Counted from the stretch's first letter, positions 21,001-41,343 are shown. The stretch is 64,000 bases of DNA from Botryllus schlosseri (GCA_051294905.1 CM119373.1:3534001-3598000), one strand, 5' to 3'. Made by a program: numbers and translations. Notes: generated by a model from the letters alone, not told the origin.

Positions 21001-24000
21001 ACTAAGTAGCTTGCCAAGAAGGAAGAAAGAACGTTCAACAGCAGCAGTTGTTGGCTGACAGCACTGAAGTTGTGCGTACACTGCTGGTGACAAACCGCGC
21101 TGCTTCATTCTGACAATGGTTTCTGCATCACAATGTTTCATCATATGCTTCTTGATATAAGAGCTATGCAATGTCCACGCAGTCTTGCTTCGGTTGGGAT
21201 ATTGCAGTACGTTGAGCATAACACCATGTCAACCAACTTGTTTCATTTGACTGTTTATGATTCACAATGTGCAGACAATGGGACATCTACAACGGTAGGC
21301 CTGTAAAGTATGCTACAAGCTGTAAAATGTCAAATGATAAGTTCACCGACAGTACAAAATCTACGATACAAACAAAATGCAGGCTGTAAAAAAGTTTCAA
21401 CTTTGTAAACAATTTTGACATTTTTTGACCTAACGCTACAATTTTGACCTAATTTTGACTTTTTTTGACATGTCAAAAAAAAATTGCCGTAGTCATGACA
21501 AACACGAGGCGAGGTTGAATCTTGAAAAAGAGATCTGTCCGACCTCGGGGTTAAAATATCTCCAGTTACTAAGAGTCACGGACTCGCCTGTATTTTCTGG
21601 TTCACAAACAGCTCTTCGACCAGTGTCCTGTCCTTGTCCACGAGCCCGGCGTGGTGCAGTCCGATTCCAAACGCTAGCGTCAGACGCAGGTTACTGTCTT
21701 GCACGTTCTTCGTCAGTTCCTCCATCTAAAAAATCACGAGCGCAGAGACATGAGTGAAAAGTTATTCCATATTGGGTTTGAAGCGACAGGAAAAAGCAGT
21801 ATCTAAATCAGCTACTTTACGAGAGAAGGTTTTGACTGGCCCGTGAGGTAATTCTCGAAATTAGTTATATTATCAAAAAAATAAATTACCCAGGAAAGTT
21901 ATTGTGAGCTTGCAATACCAACCAAAAATTTGATGAATAAAATATCAGTTCCAACTCTAACGCATTGTCGTAGCCAGGGGCCAACCACATTTACGTAAAT
22001 CTTCGTATGTGACCATAAAGTAGAATATTTCGTGGCAGATTTATTTGACTTGATGTTTTTTTAGCGCTTCACGCGATTTATTGTCACTCGATTTCTTGCA
22101 ATTAGTATTGGTGCCCACCTGAACTTTACAGAATTAATAAACTATATTCACAATTATGAGAGAAAGTGTCGACCAACATGCAACTTCGTGCCTGCAATCG
22201 CAGTAACATCGTCGGCGACATCATTTTTGACCAAATTCATTCATTACGTTCAAACAAACTTAGAGCCCCGCGCGGCTAGGATATAAATACACCCAGAATT
22301 TTTGTGTCATAATTGTTCTAGATTTTCATGCGTAGTGATATCAATCTCGTTTTCACCGTTCACTCCTATAGGACGACCAAAAAATGATCATCAATATGAA
22401 AGTGGTCCTTCGGTCGGAAAGATTATCCTCCCCTGCTTTACATCCTTAAAATATTTCATTAATGTACACTGCCATACGTTTGTCCAACGTTTTCCCGCGC
22501 ATTGCATGATTCTGATTTTAATTGGTTTTCTTTGCTATGACTACCGCAAAAATACCAGTGTAAGCTGAATTGTTTTCCAAAAGTACATCGTTACGTCATA
22601 CTTTGCTGAATTGGTTTCCATTTGAATCTCTTTTTGTATGATTGTTTTTGCGCTGCTAATATTTGACAAGGCGGACACGAAAAGTCTTCAAGTAAAATAA
22701 ATTTTACTACAATGAATGCAGTCCTGAAAGCAATATTAAAGCCACAACGGTTACCTGCCATTCCACCATATGCAGCCATTGCTTCGGGTCGTCTTCAGCG
22801 GCCAAATATGCGATCAAGTCGAGCGCGGTCAGGCGAGTCTGCCGCCTTGACGCCACGAATATCAGCACCGGCTTGGCAGGGGAATGTGTGCGAATCGCTG
22901 TATGAAATCAAGGCATAATATGGTTCGGATACAGACAACGTTAAATGGATAAAGAAATAAATTAACAGTGGTTAGTATAGCGACTACAGAAAAAGTATTG
23001 TTGCAAATTCATGCTTAACTAGACCAGCGCTTCCCAACTTGCACTGCTATCTGCCAGTGGGCCGTGAAGCTATTTAAGGTTGGTAATCAAACAATTTCTA
23101 AATGACACACTTTCCTATTCAATTTGCCAAATATGCCATACACCTTATCTTCTCATGATTAGAGAAACAAATACACGTTCTCTACCTTTAAATTAAATTG
23201 CGTTTGTTGCCATAATCGTCGTTCCCAAGCTCTCAATAATTCATGAGCCATATTTTCGTGACAGTATTTTTGATTAGAGCGCGAAATTGGACAGGGTGTT
23301 ATTGCGTAGGTCTGAGAATCGGAATTAATTCCTTCCTCGTAAGGCTTTGAGAACATTTGATTGAAACGCAGCCATCCAACTATAATTAGCAAACTATTAA
23401 AGCAACTCAAGCTACTCAGAACCCGTCCGTGTTCGACATAAAAGACGAATTACTGATGGGATATGCACTTTCTCGTTTGCAATCATATGTAGTAAGTCTT
23501 GTCTGCATGAGACACTCGTCTCCCAAATTATCGCGCATTGTCACTTGCCGGCATACAGTTTAACTCGCTACTTGCACGACACGCCTTGAAATACGTTCTT
23601 ATACTTTTGGTCATATCTAGTTGTGGGTCGTACGATGATATTTGGGATGAAAAAGGTTGGGAAGCACTTGTTCAGTGCTAGACTGTCAAGTGAAAGTAGC
23701 TATTGCCAAAATACCACAAAACTACTTTTCAGTAAATATAGTCCGTGAAAGGTCTGATGTTGTGCTTAAATATTCAGTATCAATAAGCAGTCTGAAGTAT
23801 TCCAGCAATTTGAAATTTCCTGCGAATTACCCATCGTCAGAGAAATTCCAAATCCCCCCTGAAAGAAACTAACCGCCTTGAAAAAAATTTCAAACTTCCC
23901 ACCTTGAAAGCAGGGCTTGTTCATGGAAGCCATCCTCGGGCAGTAATGCTTCCCCGCGAAGCCGTGAATGTGCACGTCCATCGGTACTGGGCGTACGGAA

Positions 24001-33000: not shown

Positions 33001-36000
33001 CTGCAATGTATTGAAATTTCCACAAGTGTTTCACGCTCCAGCAATCACGCAGAGATCGAACTTTATATAGTTGTCAGCCGATGTTATGAAGGAAACATGT
33101 AGTACATGCCAAGGTGGTTTAGATACCGCGTTCAACGGAAGATGTCCAGTCGGGAGATTTATATCGAAATCGGGCCCAGTGTATTCTATTTCTTTAGAAC
33201 AGAAACAGATCATTTCTAACAATGTTACATACATGAGCAATGTTTTATACATAAGAATAGGACATGATATATTTCTGTCCTAAAGAAATAGACGACTATA
33301 TAAAGTTTGATCTCTGCGTGACTGCTGGAGCGTGAAACCCCTATGGAAATTTCAATACATTGCTGCTCCATCACGGTGGCGCTCTGAAGAAAATGGCTGC
33401 AGCCAAATTTTGTTTGTATTGCGCTTCAATTTGAGACCACATCGTTTTTAGAATGCAGTGCCCCTTTAACACACAATCGAATGCGAGTCTAGAGGTGGTG
33501 AAACTGGCCATCGTTTGGTGCCTGAGAAGAAGTAAACACAGAACTTCTAACTTTTTAAAACTTACAACTAGAACTAGAACTACTCATACAACTATTCGGC
33601 GTTCAGAACAGACTAAAAACTAGGTAGAACCAACTGATTTATCCTAACCTGAGCAATGTACATCAGGTCCGACGTCAGCGAGAAGCTTCTGACGGATCCC
33701 CGCGAGATATACGTCTGTAGCAGTATGTTGACTTTGCCGTACGTGTTCTCCGATCCACCGCCAGGTGGCACAACACACATCGTGTCGATTAGATCGTCCA
33801 GTTCATCTAATTCGTCATCACGCACCTAGGCAAGAAGAAAAATGCGTAAAATGACTCGACTTGAGTCGCGATTTCTCGGTGACTCGACTTGACTCGAGTC
33901 ATTTTCTGAAATGCGTAAAATGACTCGACTTGAGTCGCTATTTCTTGGAGACTAACTTGACTCGAGCCATATTTTAAAATGCGTAAAATGACTTGACTCT
34001 CGATTTTTTGGTGACTCAAGTCGAGTCATTTCTTCAAATGCGTAAAATGACTCGACTCGAGTCGCGATTTCTTGGTGACTCGACTTGACTCGAGTCATTT
34101 TTTCAAATGCGTGAAATGACTCGAGTCGCGATTTCTTGGTGACTCGACTTGACTCGAGTCATGCTTTCAGATGCATAAAATGACTCGACTCGAGTCGCAA
34201 TTTTTGGTGACTTGACTTGACTCGAGTCATTTTTTGAAATGCGTAAAATGACTTGACTCCAGATTTCTTGGTGATGCGACTTGACTCGAGTCATTTTTTC
34301 AAATGCGTAAAATTACACGACTTGAGTCGCAATTTTTTGGTGACTTGACTTGACTCGATTCATTTCTTGAAATGCGTAAAATGACTCGACTCCAGATTTT
34401 TTGGTGATGCGACTTGACTCGAGTCATTTTTTCAAATGCGTAAAATTGCTCGACTCGAACCAAGTCATATGACACCCAAGACCGACATTTCATTGTAACT
34501 TCGAAGAATAGTAAAGCTACATTATTGCTATCAGTCCTGATACTTTGGAACACAGTGCCAGAAACTGTTAAGACTGAGAAAAATTAGTATATTATGAGTG
34601 TGAGCCATTCTATATCACTCGAGCAAAGTTCAAAAAGCCTGTAACCCGTACTCGACCCTCTACTAGCTGACTTGGACTCGGTGGTGAATTGAAAATGACT
34701 CGACTTGACTCCAGTCAAAACTCTAAAAGTGAGATTGACTTGTGACTCGGAACCGTGTGACTTGGTTACAACCTCGCTACTTCCGGTTTCAAGCACGACC
34801 AAAGTAGTAACTGATGCTTCTGAAGAAGAAGTAAAAGCAATGCTAAAAATTGTGGAAGTAGAATCAGGAGAAAAGGGTAAAAAAGCAACTAAGTAAGTAC
34901 CATTGGGAGATAGTTTTATCAGTGTACCAACCTTGACTTGTTCGAACTCGCTGCACTTTGAAATCATCGCAAACACTCTCGACACGGGCATGGTGGCGCT
35001 GATCATTTCGTTAAAAGTTTCGATGGTGCTACAGTTGATGTAGTAATGGGACGCGGTCCTTCCGAGGTCGGTGGCGTTGAAGTAGCCTGCAAATACAATC
35101 GCAAAGAGTTTTGAATACATACTTTAAAAAAAATATATTGTTCTTATAAAATATGTCATCCTTTCCGAGTAGAGTCCGTATTTAATGTTTTATTAAACAA
35201 ATACAAAGCTTCTGACTGTCCCTGTAATAAGATTTTTGTGGCTCATACACAACATCATAACCGCCGACTCTTTCCTCGTCAGGATATCAAAGCATACAAC
35301 GACTTCCAGGATGCAATTGCTCATAATGAGTATGACCCATATCCATCTTCATAAAAATACTAGCATCAGCCAACTCTTGGGGATATTACCACCAACACAA
35401 TTGTTCCAAGTGAGAGGGTATACTGTCAGAATGAAGCAGCTGCTGTTGAACGTTATTTCTCCATTCTGGGAAAGCTACCTTTAATTATTTCTACCACATT
35501 ACGTGATGTAACTACTGGAAATCTTCACAGGGCCAGATTTCGTTAAAATAAAGTTTTTTCATGCCAAAATTTGTCAGTTTTTGAGTCTAAAAAGAATTTT
35601 CAGGCCAGACTACTTCGTAAGGACAGACCAGTTCCAACCACAAATGAAGATAAGTAGTACAATTATAACATTATTTGGGAAAAACACCTGATTTGCATAC
35701 GTTAGGTCAAAATTAAGTTTTTCAAGGTAAAAATTTGTCGAAACTTTGATTTTTTTTGTCAAAATCTTCCGTTTTTTAGGTAAAAAAAAATCGCCCTAGT
35801 CATAACTCATATGACTTCACTACTTGGTGAAAATGCAGACACGCTGTGTCTTCAAACCACAAGTACGCCGGTTGGAGGTCGACGTACTAGTTTCTTGGTA
35901 AGCTGGAATGTTATTGTATATAAATTAAGTTTATATGGGCTGTATCTTTCTAATTAGCACCACCAATTCGAAGTTCTAGTGGAAACATGGGGCATTTGCC

Positions 36001-39000
36001 ACCATCACGCTTATGAAAATCATGAAAATTCAGCGATTCTAATTTGAGTCTAATTTTAAAAAGACTTTATACTAATTGTAATTGTAACCTGTACGCTCGT
36101 TGAACCGAGCCATTTCGGCTTTCTCCAAATGTCTCCCGGCGATTTTGATCAATTCCGCCCGCCAACGTTCCAAAAGCGGATCGTCCTGAAAGGAATCATA
36201 ATTATGACGTGAAAACCGCTGGGAAATTATCGCTAGTGTTGAACTGAAACAGTACGCTCCATGTCACTAACAGATAATTTATCAACGGAAACTATAGTTT
36301 CAATCAGGTTTGTAACGACTTTGAGTCGCCATTTTTTATCGACTCGACTTGACTCAAGTCTTTTTCTTAAATATGGAAAATGACTCGACCCGTGTCAATT
36401 TGTGTATTGACTCGAGGCTCGACAAATTCTACATGACTTCTTCAAAACTTGTATACCGGGGGCGATAATTGAAAAACGGGCTTGAAAACTGTCTTTTATC
36501 TGTTCGAAAACATGTTTAGAGTGAGAAAAATGACTATATTATGAATCCGTGGCCTTCGTTTACACCCAAGAGTTTTACAGGAGTGATTTGAGGCTGACTT
36601 GATCTCGATACCGAACAGTAGTGAACTCTACGACTTGAACTCTGACTCGAGTCTGGGAACCTCTTCTTTGGTAATATTTCTCAAGGCGCACACAGCAAAC
36701 AGCTTGGTGAAAATACGCAGAGACAATAACTCACGCTGAGTTTGTCCCATGCAATCCCGTAATGCAATGGGTTCTTCTTCATTCTGGTAAAGAGATAAGT
36801 GTAGGACAGCCATTTCACGCCGTCCTCCACAGAGTTAACGGTGCCCAAACAAATCTAGGAAGAAAAACAAACAGTAATATTAACCAACTAGTAGAGAATT
36901 ACAAAGAACATGGTATATTCAAGCTATGACACCGTACCTCTGCGTTCAAATTGTCAGTGATCTTCGACACAAACTGCGATTCGATCGGGTTTTGCCTGGT
37001 GAGCAAGGCCAGATAGTGAGACAGCTTGGCGTGGGTCGTGATGATGGTCCCTTCTCCGGTGGTGTCGAACTGTGGACGCCCGGCTCTGCCGAATATCTGA
37101 AGAAAAATTTAGAATTATTATGACCGTAAGTTGGCGGCAAAGAGCAACCTCACTTCAGATTGTAATTTTTATTATAGCTACAGTTTTTTTCTAAATTAGA
37201 TTACAATTAAAATTGTAGCTACATTGTTTTTCAAAATTAGATTTGAATTTGAACTGTAGCTACATTTTTTACATCTCAGATTAGAATTTAAATTATAACT
37301 ACAGTTTCAAATTGCGGAAGCCCAGCTGTGCCGAATATCTGGGGAAAATTTAGAATTCTTATAACCATAAGTTGGCAGCCAAGAGCAACGTCACTTCAGA
37401 TTATATTTAGAATTATAGCTACACAGTTTTTTCCAAATTAGAATACAATTAGAATTGTAGCTACACGTATTTTTCAAATGAGGTAGGAATTTGAATTATA
37501 GCTACAGTTTTTTTTCCAAATTAGATTATAATTTGAACTATCGCTACAGCGCTGAATTGCGGACGCCCAAGCTCTACCGAATATCTGGGGGAAAATGTAG
37601 AATTATTATAGCCGTAAGTTGGCGGCAAAGAGCAATGTCACATCAGGTTATATTTACAATTATAGCTACACAGTTTTTTTAGATTACAATTAGAATTGTA
37701 GCTACATGGTCTTCCCAAATTAGATTGGAATTTGTATTATAGCTACACAGTTTTTTTTCCAAACTAGATTACAATTAGAATTGTAGCTACATGGTTTTTT
37801 CGAAATTGAATTGGAATTTGGATTATGGCTACACACTTTTTTTTCCAAACTAGATTACAATTAGAATTGTAGCTGAATGGTTTTTTCGAAATTGGATTGG
37901 AATGGGAATTATAGCGACACAGTTTTTTTCTCAATTAGACTGGAATTTAAACTAGAGCCACAGTTTTTTCAGAAGTAGATTTGAATTTGAATCAAAGTTA
38001 CAATTTTTTCTAAATTAGATTAGAATTTGAATTATAGCCACAGCGTCGAATTGCGGAAGCCCAGCTGTGCTGAATATCTGGGAAAAAATTAGTATAACCG
38101 TGAGTTGGCGGCAAAGAGCAACGTCTCTTCAGATAATAAGTAGAATTGTAGCTACACGTATTTTCTAAATTAGATTAGAATTTCAACTATAGCTACAGTG
38201 TCGAATTGCGGAAGCCCAGCTCTGCCGAATATCTGGGGAAAAATGTAGAATTATTATAACCGTGAGTTGGCAGCAAAGAGCAACATCACTTCAGATTATA
38301 ATGGGAATAATAGCTACACAGTTTTTTCTCCAAATTAGATTACAATTAGTACCGTAGATACAGTTTTGCCAAATCAGACTAGAATTAGAATGATAACTGC
38401 ACAGTTTTTCCAAATCAGATTAGAATTTGAACTATAGTTACAGTGTCGAATTAAGGACGCCGAGCTCTGCCAAATATCTGGGGAAAAATTTACAATTGTT
38501 ATATCCATAAGTTGGCAGCCAAGAGCAACGTCACTTCAGATTATATTTAGAATTATAGCTACACAGTTTTTTCCAAATTAGATTACAATTAGAATTGTAG
38601 CTAAACGTATTTTTCAAATGAGGTTGGAATTTGAATTATAGCTACAGTTTTTTTCCAAATTAGATTATAATTTGAACTATCGCTACAGCGCCGAATTGCG
38701 GACGCCCAAGCTCTACCGAATATCTGGGGAAAAATGTAGAATTATCATAGCCGTAATTTGGCAACAAAGAGCAACGTCACTTCAGATTATAATTGGAATT
38801 ATAGCAACAGTTTTTTCCAAATTAGAATACAATTAGAATTGTAGTTACATAGTTTTGTCTAATTAGATTTGAATTATAACTACTTGGGTTTTTCCAAATT
38901 CCATTAGAATAGGAATTATATCGACAGTTTTTGATGAATTAATCTAGAATTGGAATTATGGCTATACATTTTTTCAAAATTAGATAGGAATTATAATGAA

Positions 39001-41343
39001 AACTGGTTTTTCCAAATTAGATTAGAATTAGGATTATTCCGATTGTGCCTATCCCTACTCACATACTCAGATTATGAACATCAATCTACTCAATGCAGTA
39101 CTGTGGGGACAGTAGAAAGTCTGCATCTTGACAAAAATTATTTAGGTTAGCAGTTGGAAACTATGCATAGGCACTTACGCAGTCACAAAGCAAACTTGCT
39201 CTATATCATACCTGCATTACGTCCAGTATGCCGAGATCGACAAACGTGCCCTGCTTTGCGTTGTAGATGTCCGTTCCCTTGATGATAACGGCGTGCGCGG
39301 GCAGATTAACGCCCCAAGCGAGAGTGGCAGTGCAGCAGAGGACTTTGATGAATCCCTGCACAATATCAAACCACTTGAAGCAGTGGTGCTAAAACTAGGA
39401 GGGGATGCGCAAAGCCGCCTGAGAGAAATGATGTTACTTTAACTCGGAATGAGTTTAATTTGTGCTGAAACTTCCAAGTTTCAACAAATGCAATAATCCT
39501 AATTATATTTCGATTATAAATGTCATAATTGCGTCGTATCATCCACAGTCCACACGCTGATGTTTGATTTTAACTGATACAGAACCTTGCACTAATCAGA
39601 AAATGTTACCGAATGAAGTGTATCTGGTGAATGCGTGTAGCTATGCCATTGGTTTTTGATTTGGCTTATGGTTTGAGCCAAGCTCAATTAGGGCAATAGA
39701 AGGAATATGGCTTACGATTTGGCTCATGTTTGAGTTAAGTTCAATTAGGGTAATACAAGGGATTAGACACCAAAATAGCCGTGCACTATGTGCTAACATT
39801 GCATATGATTATGTCTAACAAAATATTTACCTCCAGCTCGTAATTATTGCTTCAGTTACGGTCTGAGTCCAATATTTGAGAAGTGTCTCAACAGCCATAA
39901 CACCTTCCATGCCACCCACAATGCATTGGGATTGCATACATTGTGGTTGCTCTTTTTCATATTTTTTGATATGACGATAACGGGGGCGTGAAATCTTTCA
40001 CTATCATAAATGTGGGCGTATTCATAAAAATTTGAGAACTCAACTTTAAGTCTTGAAACTTTGTGATGAAGGTCAAATTTTGACTACTCCTATCGACTCT
40101 GCAGTGAACTCAATGATCATCAGGCTGCTTTGCTGCAATTTTATCTCACAAATTCGAAACATTTCATCAAAATTTTGTCATTCATCAAATTTTCATTTTT
40201 CCAACAAGAAATTCAAGCCAATTCTCGTTACCTGCGCGAAATATTTCTCCACCATGTTCCTGTCAGACCGTAGCATTCCGGCGTGATGGATGCCGAATCC
40301 AGACGCAAACAATTCCCGCATCTCACGATTTCTCGAGCTTGACAACTAAACGGAAGGTTAACACTGTTACCATCATGAAAAATGCGTATATTTTGTGGTT
40401 TCTATATTCAGGTGGTCAGTGATAAGGTACTACAAGGTTCTGAGAACCATTGAACATAGGAATAGGACGTTCTATTTATTTTTGTCCTTGATGTTTTTGC
40501 GGCATATACACCGACTCATGATATACATACACACGATCAATGCAATATGCATACCATGAGTGCATGATGTGCATATGCCGCTGGACAAGGAAGGTGCAGA
40601 TATAGCCTTGTAAGCGGCTTTCTGAGTCTCGCACCACCCTTCATGCTCTCCCGGATATGCTGAGCTACAAGCGGGGAAGCCATGGATACCAGTGTTACTA
40701 ATTAGGTCTTTGGCCTGACCCTGCCTGTGATTGAACCAACAACCTGCCAAACAAGAGCCGGAAGCTCCACCATTACGCTATCTTGTCGCCAAGAGTAAGT
40801 ATATCTACTTAACACCTGCGGATTTACAACATCCTAACATTTTCCTGCTACAATTCAGCAGAAGAGGCGAGGAAACTTTGTAAAAATCGGTGTGAATAAC
40901 GTTAGGAGATAAAATACATGTTTTTCAGCTTGACCAAAACCCGTCATCTGTCTGGTGTCGAACAGATGCGTCTCCCCGTTGTTCCTCGCCACTTCCAACA
41001 GAGCTTGTGCAGTCTTGACAGTTGCATTTCGGGCGTGGACAAACACCAAAACCTGAAACAGACGCAAAGGCTCAGTGAACAACAAAATTTCGTGAAATCT
41101 CATGGGGTACGACCAAAAAAAGATAATGAAACTCTGATTTAGCTTAATACTGAATTAGTCCCTTGAGGCCAAAATCACATAGGTACCTGATAACCACGTT
41201 CCACATTCCTAGCTGTCTTTTCGTAGCAGATGTTGTTCATTTCCTGAGCCTGTTGCATGCGGCTCATGGACTTCACTCCTACGAACGTCTGCTCGAGGGG
41301 CACGGGCCGGAATCTCCCATCGAAGAAGAACAGCCCTTTGTAT
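5937..41343 (-). CDS. ASCC3: activating signal cointegrator 1 complex subunit 3 (Ski2-like helicase; helicase-WH-Sec63 cassettes), 5'-partial, 32 exons
   Basis: 32 exons with AG/GT ends (one GC donor) and matching phases, total 4555 nt = 1517 aa + stop, no internal stops; motifs [66 protein letters not shown]-terminal Sec63 [15 protein letters not shown]; collinear with vertebrate ASCC3 from about residue 670 as recalled. Confidence 0.96.
6665..7148. mobile_element. foldback MITE with long inverted arms
   Basis: ggggtcttcaaaaatga / tcatttttgaagacccc termini flanked by TA; arms >100 nt complementary; related pieces at ~15310-15785, ~25650-26150, ~48760-48880. Confidence 0.75.
7895..8061 (-). 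CDS. ASCC3: ASCC3 exon 31
   Basis: [35 protein letters not shown]. Confidence 0.9.
9564..9655 (-). CDS. ASCC3: ASCC3 exon 30
   Basis: [30 protein letters not shown]. Confidence 0.85.
9748..10288. mobile_element. hAT-type MITE family R1 (cagggttgta TIR, GACTCGAGTC-rich), full copy
   Basis: TIRs cagggttgta / tacaaccctg; TSD cattttat / cattctat (7/8). Other copies at ~6206-6546, 12299-12625, 14562-14768, 19625-20147, 27810-27972, 30971-31437, 33838-34772, 36305-36660, 41400-41760, 60788-61272. Confidence 0.85.
10453..10558 (-). CDS. ASCC3: ASCC3 exon 29
   Basis: [23 protein letters not shown]. Confidence 0.85.
10570..11399. mobile_element. hAT derivative family R2 carrying transposase dimerisation-domain relic
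   Basis: Clear similarity along its length to 20696-21491; opposite orientation to 13071-13845. Confidence 0.8.
12091..12214 (-). CDS. ASCC3: ASCC3 exon 28
   Basis: [22 protein letters not shown]; phases fit both neighbours. Confidence 0.82.
12781..12935 (-). CDS. ASCC3: ASCC3 exon 27
   Basis: [29 protein letters not shown]. Confidence 0.9.
13071..13845. mobile_element. hAT derivative family R2 (reverse orientation)
   Basis: Reverse complement of 10570-11399; contains cagccaacaactgctgctgttgaacg (QPTTAAVER). Confidence 0.8.
13926..14094 (-). CDS. ASCC3: ASCC3 exon 26
   Basis: [38 protein letters not shown]. Confidence 0.92.
14281..14550. mobile_element. short foldback MITE family R4 (core ctagttgctgacgattacccctgacgagtgtcagccgaaaatattcgggttcatttcaatat)
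   Basis: Core present as two inverted arms here and at ~18975-19225, 47520-47780, 49150-49350; single arms at ~7595, 11905, 27345, 27980, 41975, 44865, 53930, 61850, 63440. Confidence 0.75.
14903..15019 (-). CDS. ASCC3: ASCC3 exon 25
   Basis: [25 protein letters not shown]. Confidence 0.9.
15823..15988 (-). CDS. ASCC3: ASCC3 exon 24
   Basis: [31 protein letters not shown]. Confidence 0.92.
16011..16287 (-). mobile_element. tRNA-derived SINE copy
   Basis: Homologous to 40465-40782; A-box-like 5' end; 3' end lies ~20 nt from the acceptor of exon 15988. Confidence 0.7.
17848..17986 (-). CDS. ASCC3: ASCC3 exon 23
   Basis: [31 protein letters not shown]. Confidence 0.92.
18497..18899. mobile_element. 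hAT-type MITE with CCGATA subterminal repeats
   Basis: TIRs tagaggtcgaccgat / atcggtcgacctcta; perfect 8-bp TSD ctaaaaag (18489-18496, 18900-18907). Confidence 0.92.
19300..19442 (-). CDS. ASCC3: ASCC3 exon 22
   Basis: [31 protein letters not shown]. Confidence 0.93.
19625..20147. mobile_element. MITE family R1 copy
   Basis: cagggttgtaacc..taccaacctg; same body as 9748-10288. Confidence 0.8.
20548..20668 (-). CDS. ASCC3: ASCC3 exon 21
   Basis: [30 protein letters not shown]. Confidence 0.93.
20696..21491 (-). mobile_element. hAT derivative family R2 with transposase C-terminal relic
   Basis: tagggcgattt / aaattgccgta ends; minus ORF 20920-21219 contains [24 protein letters not shown] (hAT dimerisation SAxVERxFS-like); further partial copies at ~31700-31893 and 35330-35798. 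Confidence 0.8.
21588..21725 (-). CDS. ASCC3: ASCC3 exon 20 (followed by GC donor)
   Basis: [33 protein letters not shown]|gcgagt. Confidence 0.9.
22755..22897 (-). CDS. ASCC3: ASCC3 exon 19
   Basis: [28 protein letters not shown]. Confidence 0.92.
23903..24023 (-). CDS. ASCC3: ASCC3 exon 18
   Basis: [37 protein letters not shown]. Confidence 0.93.
24154..24299 (-). CDS. ASCC3: ASCC3 exon 17
   Basis: [34 protein letters not shown]. Confidence 0.93.
24385..25045. repeat. minisatellite of ~30-40 bp units (actagaactacccacttttcaaaactcaca-like)
   Basis: Many degenerate tandem units with higher-order repetition; source of spurious TTHFSK / PTFQN ORFs. Confidence 0.85.
25134..25300 (-). CDS. ASCC3: ASCC3 exon 16 (DEIH)
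   Basis: [34 protein letters not shown]. Confidence 0.93.
26204..26369 (-). CDS. ASCC3: ASCC3 exon 15 (Walker A of second cassette)
   Basis: [26 protein letters not shown]. Confidence 0.93.
27491..27628 (-). CDS. ASCC3: ASCC3 exon 14
   Basis: [29 protein letters not shown]. Confidence 0.92.
28340..28508 (-). CDS. ASCC3: ASCC3 exon 13
   Basis: [35 protein letters not shown]. Confidence 0.92.
29039..30469. mobile_element. non-autonomous piggyBac-like element (1.43 kb)
   Basis: TTAA at 29035-29038 and 30470-30473; TIRs ccatttgacaccggc / gccggtgccaatcgg (12/15 complementary); no transposase ORF recognised. Confidence 0.7.
30670..30768 (-). CDS. ASCC3: ASCC3 exon 12
   Basis: [33 protein letters not shown]. 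Confidence 0.9.
31469..31623 (-). CDS. ASCC3: ASCC3 exon 11
   Basis: [25 protein letters not shown]. Confidence 0.92.
32649..32874 (-). CDS. ASCC3: ASCC3 exon 10
   Basis: [23 protein letters not shown]. Confidence 0.92.
32898..33465. mobile_element. Kolobok-like foldback MITE
   Basis: TTAA TSD (32894-32897, 33466-33469); ~185-bp inverted arms beginning agcggcactgca / tgcagtgcccct. Confidence 0.85.
33649..33825 (-). CDS. ASCC3: ASCC3 exon 9
   Basis: [26 protein letters not shown]. Confidence 0.92.
33838..34460. repeat. tandem array (~10 units, ~58-69 bp) amplified from the end of an R1 MITE
   Basis: Unit aaatgcgtaaaatgactcgacttgagtcgcgatttcttggtgactcgacttgactcgagtcatttt; runs directly into R1 body to 34772. 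Confidence 0.9.
34932..35086 (-). CDS. ASCC3: ASCC3 exon 8
   Basis: [23 protein letters not shown]. Confidence 0.92.
36089..36185 (-). CDS. ASCC3: ASCC3 exon 7
   Basis: [32 protein letters not shown]. Confidence 0.9.
36735..36854 (-). CDS. ASCC3: ASCC3 exon 6
   Basis: [33 protein letters not shown]. Confidence 0.9.
36938..37096 (-). CDS. ASCC3: ASCC3 exon 5
   Basis: [22 protein letters not shown]. Confidence 0.92.
37097..39045 (-). repeat. ~245-bp complex tandem array containing six copies of the ASCC3 exon-5 acceptor and exon start
   Basis: Decoy AG at 37339, 37585, 38078, 38233, 38478, 38724; copy 4 matches the real exon at 31/35 nt; near-identical higher-order duplication ~37381-37620 vs ~38521-38760. 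Confidence 0.92.
39212..39355 (-). CDS. ASCC3: ASCC3 exon 4
   Basis: [33 protein letters not shown]. Confidence 0.92.
40232..40345 (-). CDS. ASCC3: ASCC3 exon 3
   Basis: [38 protein letters not shown]. Confidence 0.92.
40465..40782 (-). mobile_element. tRNA-derived SINE
   Basis: Minus strand starts gatagcgtaatgg (A box) ..ggttcaatcac (B box), then ggcttccccgcttgtagctcagcat, a central motif I recall from Meta-domain SINEs (unverified). Confidence 0.75.
40918..41052 (-). CDS. ASCC3: ASCC3 exon 2
   Basis: [19 protein letters not shown]. Confidence 0.92.
41187..41343 (-). CDS. ASCC3: ASCC3 exon 1 of 32 seen
   Basis: [24 protein letters not shown]; phase-2 acceptor, so upstream exons are required. 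Confidence 0.92.

What the first reader, a model, noticed from the sequence alone, without database searches (positions are those of the whole stretch)
37062..39045. Array of six decoy 3' splice sites copying the ASCC3 motif-VI exon start
Seen: each ~245-bp unit holds a branch-like cttac/ctcac, a pyrimidine tract (ttttccccag or tttttcccag), AG and ~35 nt of exon 5. All six lie upstream of the true acceptor (37097) in the pre-mRNA. Splicing to any of them gives IFGRAG-like residues then a stop within ~40 codons (e.g. copy 4 [20 protein letters not shown], copy 5 IFGRARRP*). The decoys share mostly synonymous differences from the live exon (GCT/CCG/CAA vs GCC/CCA/CAG), suggesting they came from another allele or an ancestral exon. 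Inference: either a built-in poison/alternative-last-exon switch truncating ASCC3 in its first helicase cassette, or a natural test of exon definition. As an analogy only, human ASCC3 is known to make a short UV-induced alternative-last-exon isoform.
Basis: partly seen in the sequence, partly recalled or inferred. Interest (0 to 1): 0.8.

Follow-up and report, generated by a model that had tools for sequence, protein, structure and literature searches.

The report
Six decoy acceptors in ASCC3 intron
A repeat array inside one intron of the helicase gene ASCC3 has copied the end of the intron plus the first 35 bases of the next exon six times; the copies look like usable splice sites but are most likely a harmless by-product of repeat expansion rather than a built-in switch.

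Summary
On the minus strand, the 2,115-nt intron between the ASCC3 exons ending at 39212 and starting at 37096 holds six diverged copies (72-89% alike). Each copy is about 75 nt of intron 3' end plus 35 nt of exon start. They are interleaved with a 41-43-bp minisatellite that occurs at well over a thousand other places in this genome.

All six share one exon-to-satellite junction, so they come from a single duplication. That unit was then amplified as a roughly 245-bp higher-order repeat. One unit-long patch is 97% identical between two units, which shows recent exchange.

The copied core is unique to this locus. Array words occur in DNA contigs of two samples from two studies. The closest available relative, Styela clava, has the same intron (about 750 nt) without any array.

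The decoys score as good acceptors, though below the live one. They lack usable downstream donors, poly(A) signals and exon-like composition.

RNA reads gave no coverage of any ASCC3 exon, so decoy usage is untested.

Best reading: a near-neutral by-product of repeat amplification. These are orphan acceptors, largely ignored or cleared by nonsense-mediated decay. A regulated poison or last-exon switch is not supported. A word search of the scan's notes found no equivalent case on other DNA.

The parts
39212..39355 (-). Upstream ASCC3 exon (ends ...GILDVMQ). The donor is CAG|GTATGA and the exon's last base is 39212.
   Evidence: 84% identical to Styela clava ASCC3 residues 780-836.
37097..39211 (-). 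Phase-0 intron of 2,115 nt, 33% GC, that holds the whole array.
39046..39211 (-). Unique 5' part of the intron, upstream of the array.
   Evidence: single place in the own genome.
37157..39045 (-). Array of 41-43-bp minisatellite monomers with the six captured junction copies. The higher-order period is about 245 bp.
   Evidence: periods 41/42/86/241/245; the monomer family has at least 1,864 candidate places genome-wide.
38689..38798 (-). Decoy d6: about 75 nt of intron 3' end plus 35 nt of exon start. Exon-like first base 38723; stop after 40 codons.
   Evidence: acceptor score 7.6.
38443..38552 (-). Decoy d5. Exon-like first base 38477; stop after 8 codons.
   Evidence: acceptor score 7.6.
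38198..38307 (-). Decoy d4. Exon-like first base 38232; stop after 20 codons. It is the decoy closest to the live copy (84%).
   Evidence: acceptor score 7.6.
38043..38152 (-). Decoy d3. Exon-like first base 38077, in a short 155-nt unit with a 5-nt deletion in the intron part; stop after 20 codons.
   Evidence: acceptor score 5.7.
37550..37659 (-). Decoy d2. Exon-like first base 37584; stop after 36 codons.
   Evidence: acceptor score 7.1.
37304..37413 (-). Decoy d1. Exon-like first base 37338; stop after 16 codons.
   Evidence: acceptor score 5.1.
37680..38042 (-). Pure satellite stretch (86-bp dimer, about 4 copies) between d3 and d2.
38505..38750 (-). One-unit patch that is 97.2% identical to 37365-37611, while its flanks are 77-78% identical. 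It marks a recent conversion or unequal exchange.
37365..37611 (-). Partner of the 97.2% patch.
36938..37096 (-). Live exon ([11 protein letters not shown]..., helicase motif VI of cassette 1), preceded by the live acceptor ...TTTTTCTTCAG. GC 55%.
   Evidence: 81% identical to Styela ASCC3 residues 830-891; acceptor score 9.7.
37148..37156 (-). The only donor-like site in the intron that scores within the range of real donors (GAA|GTGAGG, score 6.2). It lies 57 nt upstream of the live acceptor, in the last unit only.
37168..37173 (-). The only AATAAA in the intron. It lies downstream of all six decoys.
   Evidence: about 3 expected from composition; no ATTAAA.

Best explanation
The array is a by-product of repeat dynamics, not a device.

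Origin (shown by sequence). A dispersed 41-43-bp minisatellite lies in this ASCC3 intron directly against the last ~75 nt of the intron. One tandem duplication had its left breakpoint in the satellite and its right breakpoint 35 nt into the exon, with a 2-nt microhomology (AC) at the junction GACAC|TGTAGC. This placed a second copy of 'intron end plus exon start' inside the intron and left the downstream copy joined to the rest of the exon. The unit of three monomers plus junction (about 245 bp) was then amplified and shuffled by unequal exchange and gene conversion, giving six decoys.

Consequence (inferred). The decoys are complete but orphan 3' splice sites. After 35 nt they run into AT-rich satellite with no usable donor, no poly(A) signal and no exon-like composition. 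The spliceosome therefore mostly pairs donor 39212 with the stronger, exon-defined live acceptor at 37096. Any decoy use gives a stop within 8-40 codons and an NMD-prone RNA. The net effect is a ninefold longer intron and at most a small splicing leak.
For: - Six copies, 72-89% alike, all with the same exon-to-satellite junction.
- The core is unique to this locus and both flanks of the array are unique.
- The monomer family has at least 1,864 candidate places, in arrays of 0.75 to over 4 kb, on many chromosomes.
- Relationships are mosaic: d1's intron part is nearest d5 (93%) and its exon part nearest d4 (92%). A unit-long 97.2% patch sits between flanks of 77-78%.
- The Styela clava ASCC3 has the intron at the same position and phase, about 750 nt, without tandem repeat or decoy.
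- With a PWM built from 17 acceptors of the same gene, the live site scores 9.7 and the decoys 5.1-7.6.
- Donor-like sites downstream of the decoys score 4.2 or less, against a median of 7.5 for 21 real donors. The one exception is the site at 37154.
- There is one AATAAA and no ATTAAA in the intron.
- GC after the copied 35 nt is 0.20-0.33, against 0.53 in the live exon.
- Live-versus-decoy fixed differences are 7 of 75 in the intron part and 3 of 35 in the exon part, a similar neutral-like divergence.
Against: - Usage was not measured. The four RNA runs laid on 35001-41000 gave zero depth on every ASCC3 exon, the canonical junction included, so there is no power.
- The decoys score above the median genuine acceptor of this gene, and five of six are above the 95th percentile of non-splice AGs. 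The first decoy is transcribed 1.6 kb before the live site, so appreciable use is mechanistically possible.
- All six keep AG and the pyrimidine tract despite 11-28% divergence. That is expected from shared ancestry and conversion, but it does not exclude constraint.
Confidence: 0.7

Rival explanations
1. Unproductive-splicing leak or rheostat. The decoys compete with the live acceptor at an appreciable rate. This yields transcripts with a stop inside motif VI of helicase cassette 1 that are degraded by NMD, lowering ASCC3 output constitutively or in a regulated way (poison 3' splice sites).
For: The decoys are complete 3' splice sites scoring 5.1-7.6, above the median (4.5) of real acceptors of the gene. 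They are transcribed first. All give early in-frame stops. d1 together with the donor-like site at 37154 (score 6.2) could define a 185-nt poison exon.
Against: No junction evidence exists (uninformative). Donors after d2-d6 are weak and the composition is not exon-like. The array is absent from the Styela orthologue. The array shows ordinary satellite turnover.
Confidence: 0.18
2. Decoy-mediated intron detention. Factors assembled on the decoy acceptors engage donor 39212 non-productively, so the intron is retained in the nucleus, as proposed for decoy exons in SF3B1 and OGT.
For: By analogy only (PMC6097662, PMC7373989). The intron is longer than 1 kb and has several strong internal 3' splice sites.
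Against: Decoy exons need both decoy splice sites, and here the donors are weak. The array is not conserved in Styela. No intron-retention signal could be measured.
Confidence: 0.05
3. Alternative-last-exon switch. Splicing to a decoy followed by intronic polyadenylation gives a short ASCC3 RNA, as in the UV-induced human short isoform.
For: There is one AATAAA at 37173, 165 nt downstream of the d1 acceptor. The human precedent is PMC5332558.
Against: There is no AATAAA or ATTAAA after d2-d6, and the single hexamer is fewer than the ~3 expected by composition. The human event uses a promoter-proximal exon, whereas this site is mid-gene, at about residue 836 of about 2,160. No 3'-end pile-up appeared, which had no power.
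Confidence: 0.03
4. Assembly artefact. The array, or its copy number, was created by mis-assembly of a repeat.
For: Tandem repeats are error-prone in assemblies. The best DNA holders of the array (64-84% of its words) may be the source sample.
Against: The copies differ by 11-28% with unit-specific indels, unlike collapsed or expanded identical repeats. A second sample from another study holds 40% of the array's words, and further runs hold 5-8%.
Confidence: 0.03

Closest known systems
Tandem genomic duplication absorbed by splicing (Rogers model; Hellsten et al. 2011, PMC3265369; potato RdRp case, PMC4974935)
   Same: A direct tandem duplication within a gene leaves the mature mRNA unchanged, because the redundant segment lies between a donor and the last acceptor and is spliced out.
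   Different: In those cases an exonic AGGT is duplicated and a new intron is born. Here the duplication spans an existing intron-exon boundary, so the extra copies simply lengthen the old intron. They were then multiplied sixfold as part of a satellite higher-order repeat.
Decoy exons that drive intron retention or detention (SF3B1, OGT; PMC6097662, PMC7373989, PMC12017769)
   Same: Both are intronic, non-productive splice sites able to engage the flanking constitutive sites. In both, inclusion would bring in premature stops.
   Different: Decoy exons have both a 3' and a 5' splice site, are conserved and have measured effects on retention. Here there are only 3' sites with weak or no donors, the array is lineage-specific, and the effect is unmeasured.
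Poison exons and NMD-coupled unproductive splicing
   Same: Use of any decoy gives an in-frame stop far upstream of the last exon junction.
   Different: Classical poison exons are deeply conserved and regulated. These copies are young, variable and embedded in a satellite.
Human ASCC3 UV-induced short alternative-last-exon isoform (Williamson et al. 2017, PMC5332558)
   Same: It is the same gene family, and a truncated RNA is conceivable.
   Different: The human isoform uses a promoter-proximal last exon with its own poly(A) site and acts as a non-coding RNA. Here the site is mid-gene, without poly(A) signals after five of the six decoys.
NAGNAG and other tandem acceptors (e.g. PMC2699507)
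   Same: Several acceptors compete for one donor.
   Different: Those lie 3-12 nt apart and give subtle in-frame variants. These are 155-493 nt apart, each with its own branch region and tract, and all are disruptive.

Membership tests
Tandem duplication across a splice junction, absorbed by splicing | Direct head-to-tail copies that share one breakpoint junction | tested here: met
   All six copies end at the same exon position (35 nt) and join the same satellite position, GACAC|TGTAGC.
Tandem duplication across a splice junction, absorbed by splicing | The coding sequence is intact when the outermost donor and the last acceptor are used | tested here: met
   Joining 39212 to 37096 reads ...[15 protein letters not shown]..., matching Styela ASCC3 at 81-84% identity without stops.
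Tandem duplication across a splice junction, absorbed by splicing | The redundant segment is actually removed from the mRNA | tested here: inconclusive
   Read laying gave zero depth on all ASCC3 exons in four RNA runs.
Minisatellite higher-order repeat | A monomer family in tandem, with a longer period that is more self-similar than the monomers | tested here: met
   TRF finds period 41-42 at 69-78% matches and period 241-245 at 80-82%. The family is dispersed genome-wide.
Decoy exon (intron detention) | An intronic pseudo-exon with both a 3' and a 5' splice site | tested here: not met
   Donor-like sites after d2-d6 score 4.2 or less, against a median of 7.5 for real donors. Only 37154 (score 6.2) after d1 is within range.
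Decoy exon (intron detention) | The host intron is retained in a sizeable share of transcripts | tested here: inconclusive
   There was no usable RNA coverage.
Decoy exon (intron detention) | Conservation of the decoy across species | tested here: not met
   The Styela clava orthologous intron has no array or decoy. No closer relative was available.
Poison exon / NMD-coupled splicing | Inclusion introduces a premature stop upstream of later exon junctions | tested here: met
   Stops appear after 8-40 codons for all six, and more than 25 exons follow.
Poison exon / NMD-coupled splicing | Inclusion junctions are observed, and raised when NMD is blocked | not testable with these tools
   There were no junction reads at all, canonical ones included, and no NMD-inhibited data.
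Alternative last exon / intronic polyadenylation | A 3' splice site followed by a poly(A) signal | tested here: not met
   There is no AATAAA or ATTAAA after d2-d6 and a single AATAAA at 37173 after d1.
Alternative last exon / intronic polyadenylation | RNA 3' ends map inside the intron | tested here: inconclusive
   No end pile-ups were seen in the intron, but coverage was nil.

The most novel reading that the evidence does not exclude
The six orphan acceptors act as a tunable sink for the upstream donor. By drawing U2AF and U2 onto non-productive sites, they would set or regulate (for example under translational or alkylation stress) how much full-length ASCC3 is made, through NMD or nuclear intron detention. 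The copy number of the satellite unit would then act as a heritable dosage dial.
Probability: 0.07. Interest if true: 0.7.

Novelty: new member of a known kind. Interest (0 to 1): 0.3.

Why it matters
If the neutral reading holds, this is a clean natural experiment. Seven near-identical complete 3' splice sites lie in series behind one donor in an essential, single-copy gene, and only the last is attached to a real exon. Counting junctions would show directly how much local acceptor strength, transcription order and exon context each contribute to splice-site choice in this animal.

It also documents a route by which satellite amplification can capture and multiply a splice junction without killing the gene. 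The three fixed third-position differences may date from before the duplication.

If the decoys were used appreciably, it would be a young, copy-number-variable form of unproductive splicing in a ribosome-quality-control helicase.

Tried and rejected
- RNA test. Four bulk RNA runs were laid on 35001-41000. Depth was zero on all six ASCC3 exons, and 98-100% of laid reads were partial matches, almost all to an interspersed repeat at 40401-40800. Not even the canonical junction was seen, so nothing can be said about decoy use. The tool warns that reads of conserved genes may be filtered. The only read-laying run is spent.
- Own-species transcripts through protein searches. No protein of this species or of a close relative was returned. 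The nearest is Styela clava at 71%, so the array cannot be dated more finely.
- Exact look-up of two array ORFs in public assemblies: not on record.
- Transposon capture (for example a Helitron or MITE carrying the exon piece). Rejected because the core and both flanks are unique to this locus; only the satellite is dispersed.
- RNA structure that loops the array out. Only short AT-rich partial palindromes inside monomers were found. There were no Rfam matches.
- Recursive splicing. The junction after splicing to a decoy would read CAG|ATATTC, which does not regenerate a donor.
- Selection on the decoy signals. Six related, converting copies give no power. Intact AG in all six is not unexpected.
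- Polarising the three synonymous differences with Styela. Styela has GCA, CCA and CAG, but 10 of 15 third positions differ between the two species, so this is not informative.

Full report
**What is there.**
The gene is on the minus strand. The exon ending ...GILDVMQ stops at 39212 (donor CAG|GTATGA). The next coding exon, [11 protein letters not shown]... (helicase motif VI of the first cassette), starts at 37096. tblastn with the Styela clava ASCC3-like protein (P0257) covers exons from about 41350 down to about 5950. It gives 71% identity over 2,021 aligned residues, far above any other hit (next best 58%). The gene is therefore an intact ASCC3 and the animal is probably a tunicate; the second point is an inference.

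Inside the 2,115-nt intron there are six further copies of the acceptor region. Their exon-like first bases are 38723 (d6), 38477 (d5), 38232 (d4), 38077 (d3), 37584 (d2) and 37338 (d1). Each copy comprises about 75 nt of intron 3' end and 35 nt of exon. Pairwise identity is 72-89%. The donor is in phase 0, so entry at any decoy gives stops after 40, 8, 20, 20, 36 and 16 codons.

**Not chance, not an artefact.**
In the 495-Mb assembly the 161-nt unit matches only these seven places (E 1e-35 to 1e-77). Only its first 44 nt, which are satellite, match elsewhere. The copies differ by 11-28% and by unit-specific indels, which is not what a collapsed or inflated assembly produces. Sampled 31-mers of the pure array (37100-39040) occur in the contigs of four DNA runs of one sample (64-84%). 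They also occur in a second sample from another study (40%) and, at 5-8%, in several more runs.

**The context explains the origin.**
- Tandem Repeats Finder reports periods of 41-42 bp (69-78% matches), 86 bp, and 241-245 bp (80-82%) over 37066-38876.
- The 41-43-bp monomer belongs to a dispersed family. There are at least 1,864 first-look places on most large contigs, in arrays of about 0.75 kb to over 4 kb.
- The array here (37157-39045) lies between two stretches that are unique in the genome: the 166-nt 5' part of the intron and the 75-nt 3' end of the intron. A transposon carrying a captured exon piece is therefore not the explanation.
- All six decoys leave the exon at the same base and enter the satellite at the same monomer position (GACAC|TGTAGC, against the live exon's GACAC|CACC). 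The two parents share AC.
- A single tandem duplication is thus the founding event. Its left breakpoint was in the satellite and its right breakpoint 35 nt into the exon. The upstream copy became intronic, and the downstream copy stayed fused to the rest of the exon.
- The unit of three monomers plus junction then behaved as a higher-order repeat.

**Later exchange is visible.**
- d1's intron part is closest to d5 (93%), while its exon part is closest to d4 (92%). The exon parts of d2 and d6 are 97% alike.
- A patch exactly one unit long (38750-38505 against 37611-37365) is 97.2% identical, between flanks of 77-78%.
- The stretch between d3 and d2 is a local expansion of an 86-bp dimer.

**Comparison with a relative.**
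In Styela clava (locus L023), the intron lies at the same codon boundary and phase. It is about 750 nt long and has no tandem repeat and no second copy of the exon start. No closer relative could be found, so the array can only be called lineage-specific with respect to Styela. Without the array, the intron here would be about 240 nt.

**The three shared differences.**
The live copy differs from at least five of the six decoys at 7 of 75 intron positions and at 3 of 35 exon positions. These divergences (about 9% each) are similar. All three exon differences are at third codon positions. If they had arisen at random in a dead copy, that would happen about 4% of the time ((12/35)^3). They more likely arose in a functional exon, either as synonymous changes in the live exon after the duplication or as differences between two functional alleles that recombined unequally. 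Styela's codons (GCA, CCA, CAG) do not help, because third positions are largely saturated.

**Would the decoys be used?**
I built a position weight matrix from 17 acceptors of this same gene, with the live site left out.
- Real sites score 0.7-10.7 in leave-one-out scoring (median 4.5). The live site scores 9.7 and the decoys 5.1-7.6.
- The 95th percentile of 1,512 other AGs is 5.5.
- The decoys are therefore good acceptors, and the live one is the best. Its tract is T-richer (TTTTTCTTCAG against TTTTTCCCCAG).
- The matrix is small, so these numbers are rough.

What the decoys lack is everything downstream.
- Donor-like sites in the array score 4.2 or less, against a median of 7.5 for 21 real donors. 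The exception is GAA|GTGAGG at 37154 (score 6.2), found only in the last unit, 57 nt before the live acceptor.
- GC beyond the copied 35 nt is 0.20-0.33, against 0.53 in the live exon.
- The intron holds one AATAAA (37173) and no ATTAAA, where about three of each are expected.
- No long inverted repeats bridge the array, and there are no Rfam matches.

From established knowledge of exon definition, an acceptor without a downstream donor and without exonic enhancers is poorly committed. This is an inference, not a test made here. If a decoy were used, the RNA would carry an early stop with more than 25 exon junctions downstream, which is the classic NMD substrate.

**RNA evidence.**
It gave zero depth on all six ASCC3 exons in 35001-41000. 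Between 98% and 100% of laid reads were partial matches, nearly all on an interspersed repeat at 40401-40800. The canonical junction was not seen either, so the result says nothing about decoy use. The tool itself warns that reads of conserved genes may be filtered.

Five RNA-like contig sets hold 6-9% of the words of 36900-39300, about the exon share. One of them also holds about 6% of the array words.

**Verdict.**
The origin is well supported by sequence: a single junction-spanning duplication inside a dispersed minisatellite, then higher-order amplification with ongoing exchange. That the decoys are functionally near-neutral orphan acceptors is the best-supported inference, which I put at about 0.7.

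Against the poison, last-exon or detention device are the missing donors and poly(A) signals, the absence of the array in Styela, and the ordinary satellite behaviour. It is not excluded, because usage is unmeasured and the decoys are intrinsically good sites that are transcribed first.

The nearest known frameworks are the Rogers and Hellsten model of duplications absorbed by splicing (PMC3265369) and, for the functional alternatives, decoy exons (PMC6097662, PMC7373989) and the human ASCC3 short isoform (PMC5332558). A word search of the scan's notes found no equivalent case on other DNA.

Noticed in passing
window 40450-40780: A ~320-bp interspersed repeat (SINE-like; no tRNA or Rfam match) lies in the neighbouring ASCC3 intron. 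It has at least 3,270 candidate copies at 86-88% identity across the genome. It drew RNA depth above 1,000 as partial reads from other copies.
   Followed up: partly
own genome, e.g. G000:C6:5618401-5622543; loci L013, L014: The 41-43-bp minisatellite of the array is a genome-wide family with at least 1,864 candidate places. It often shows 85/86-bp and 128/171-bp higher-order periods, in arrays of 0.75 to over 4 kb. Whether it captures flanking sequence elsewhere was not examined.
   Followed up: partly
window 21586-21588: There is a candidate GC-AG intron in the second helicase cassette of ASCC3. The exon ends ...AAAATACAG and is followed by GCGAGT rather than GT.
   Followed up: no
window 35001-41000: All six ASCC3 exons in this stretch had zero RNA depth in four bulk RNA runs, although the organism's repeats were abundantly covered. 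The cause may be the tool's filter for conserved, human-like reads; it remains unexplained.
   Followed up: no
window 37148-37156: The last repeat unit alone carries GAA|GTGAGG; the other units have GTGACG, GTGATG or GAGACG. This donor-like site is within the score range of real donors. With the d1 acceptor it would define a 185-nt stop-containing exon followed by a 57-nt mini-intron.
   Followed up: partly
window 36855-36937: The intron directly downstream of the live exon is only 83 nt. Without the array, the decoy-bearing intron would be about 240 nt. The array may therefore have moved this intron from a short class to a long class.
   Followed up: no
run X1: One RNA-like contig set from 2015 holds about 6% of the sampled words of the pure array. 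If it is RNA, some array sequence reaches assembled transcripts through retention or decoy use.
   Followed up: no
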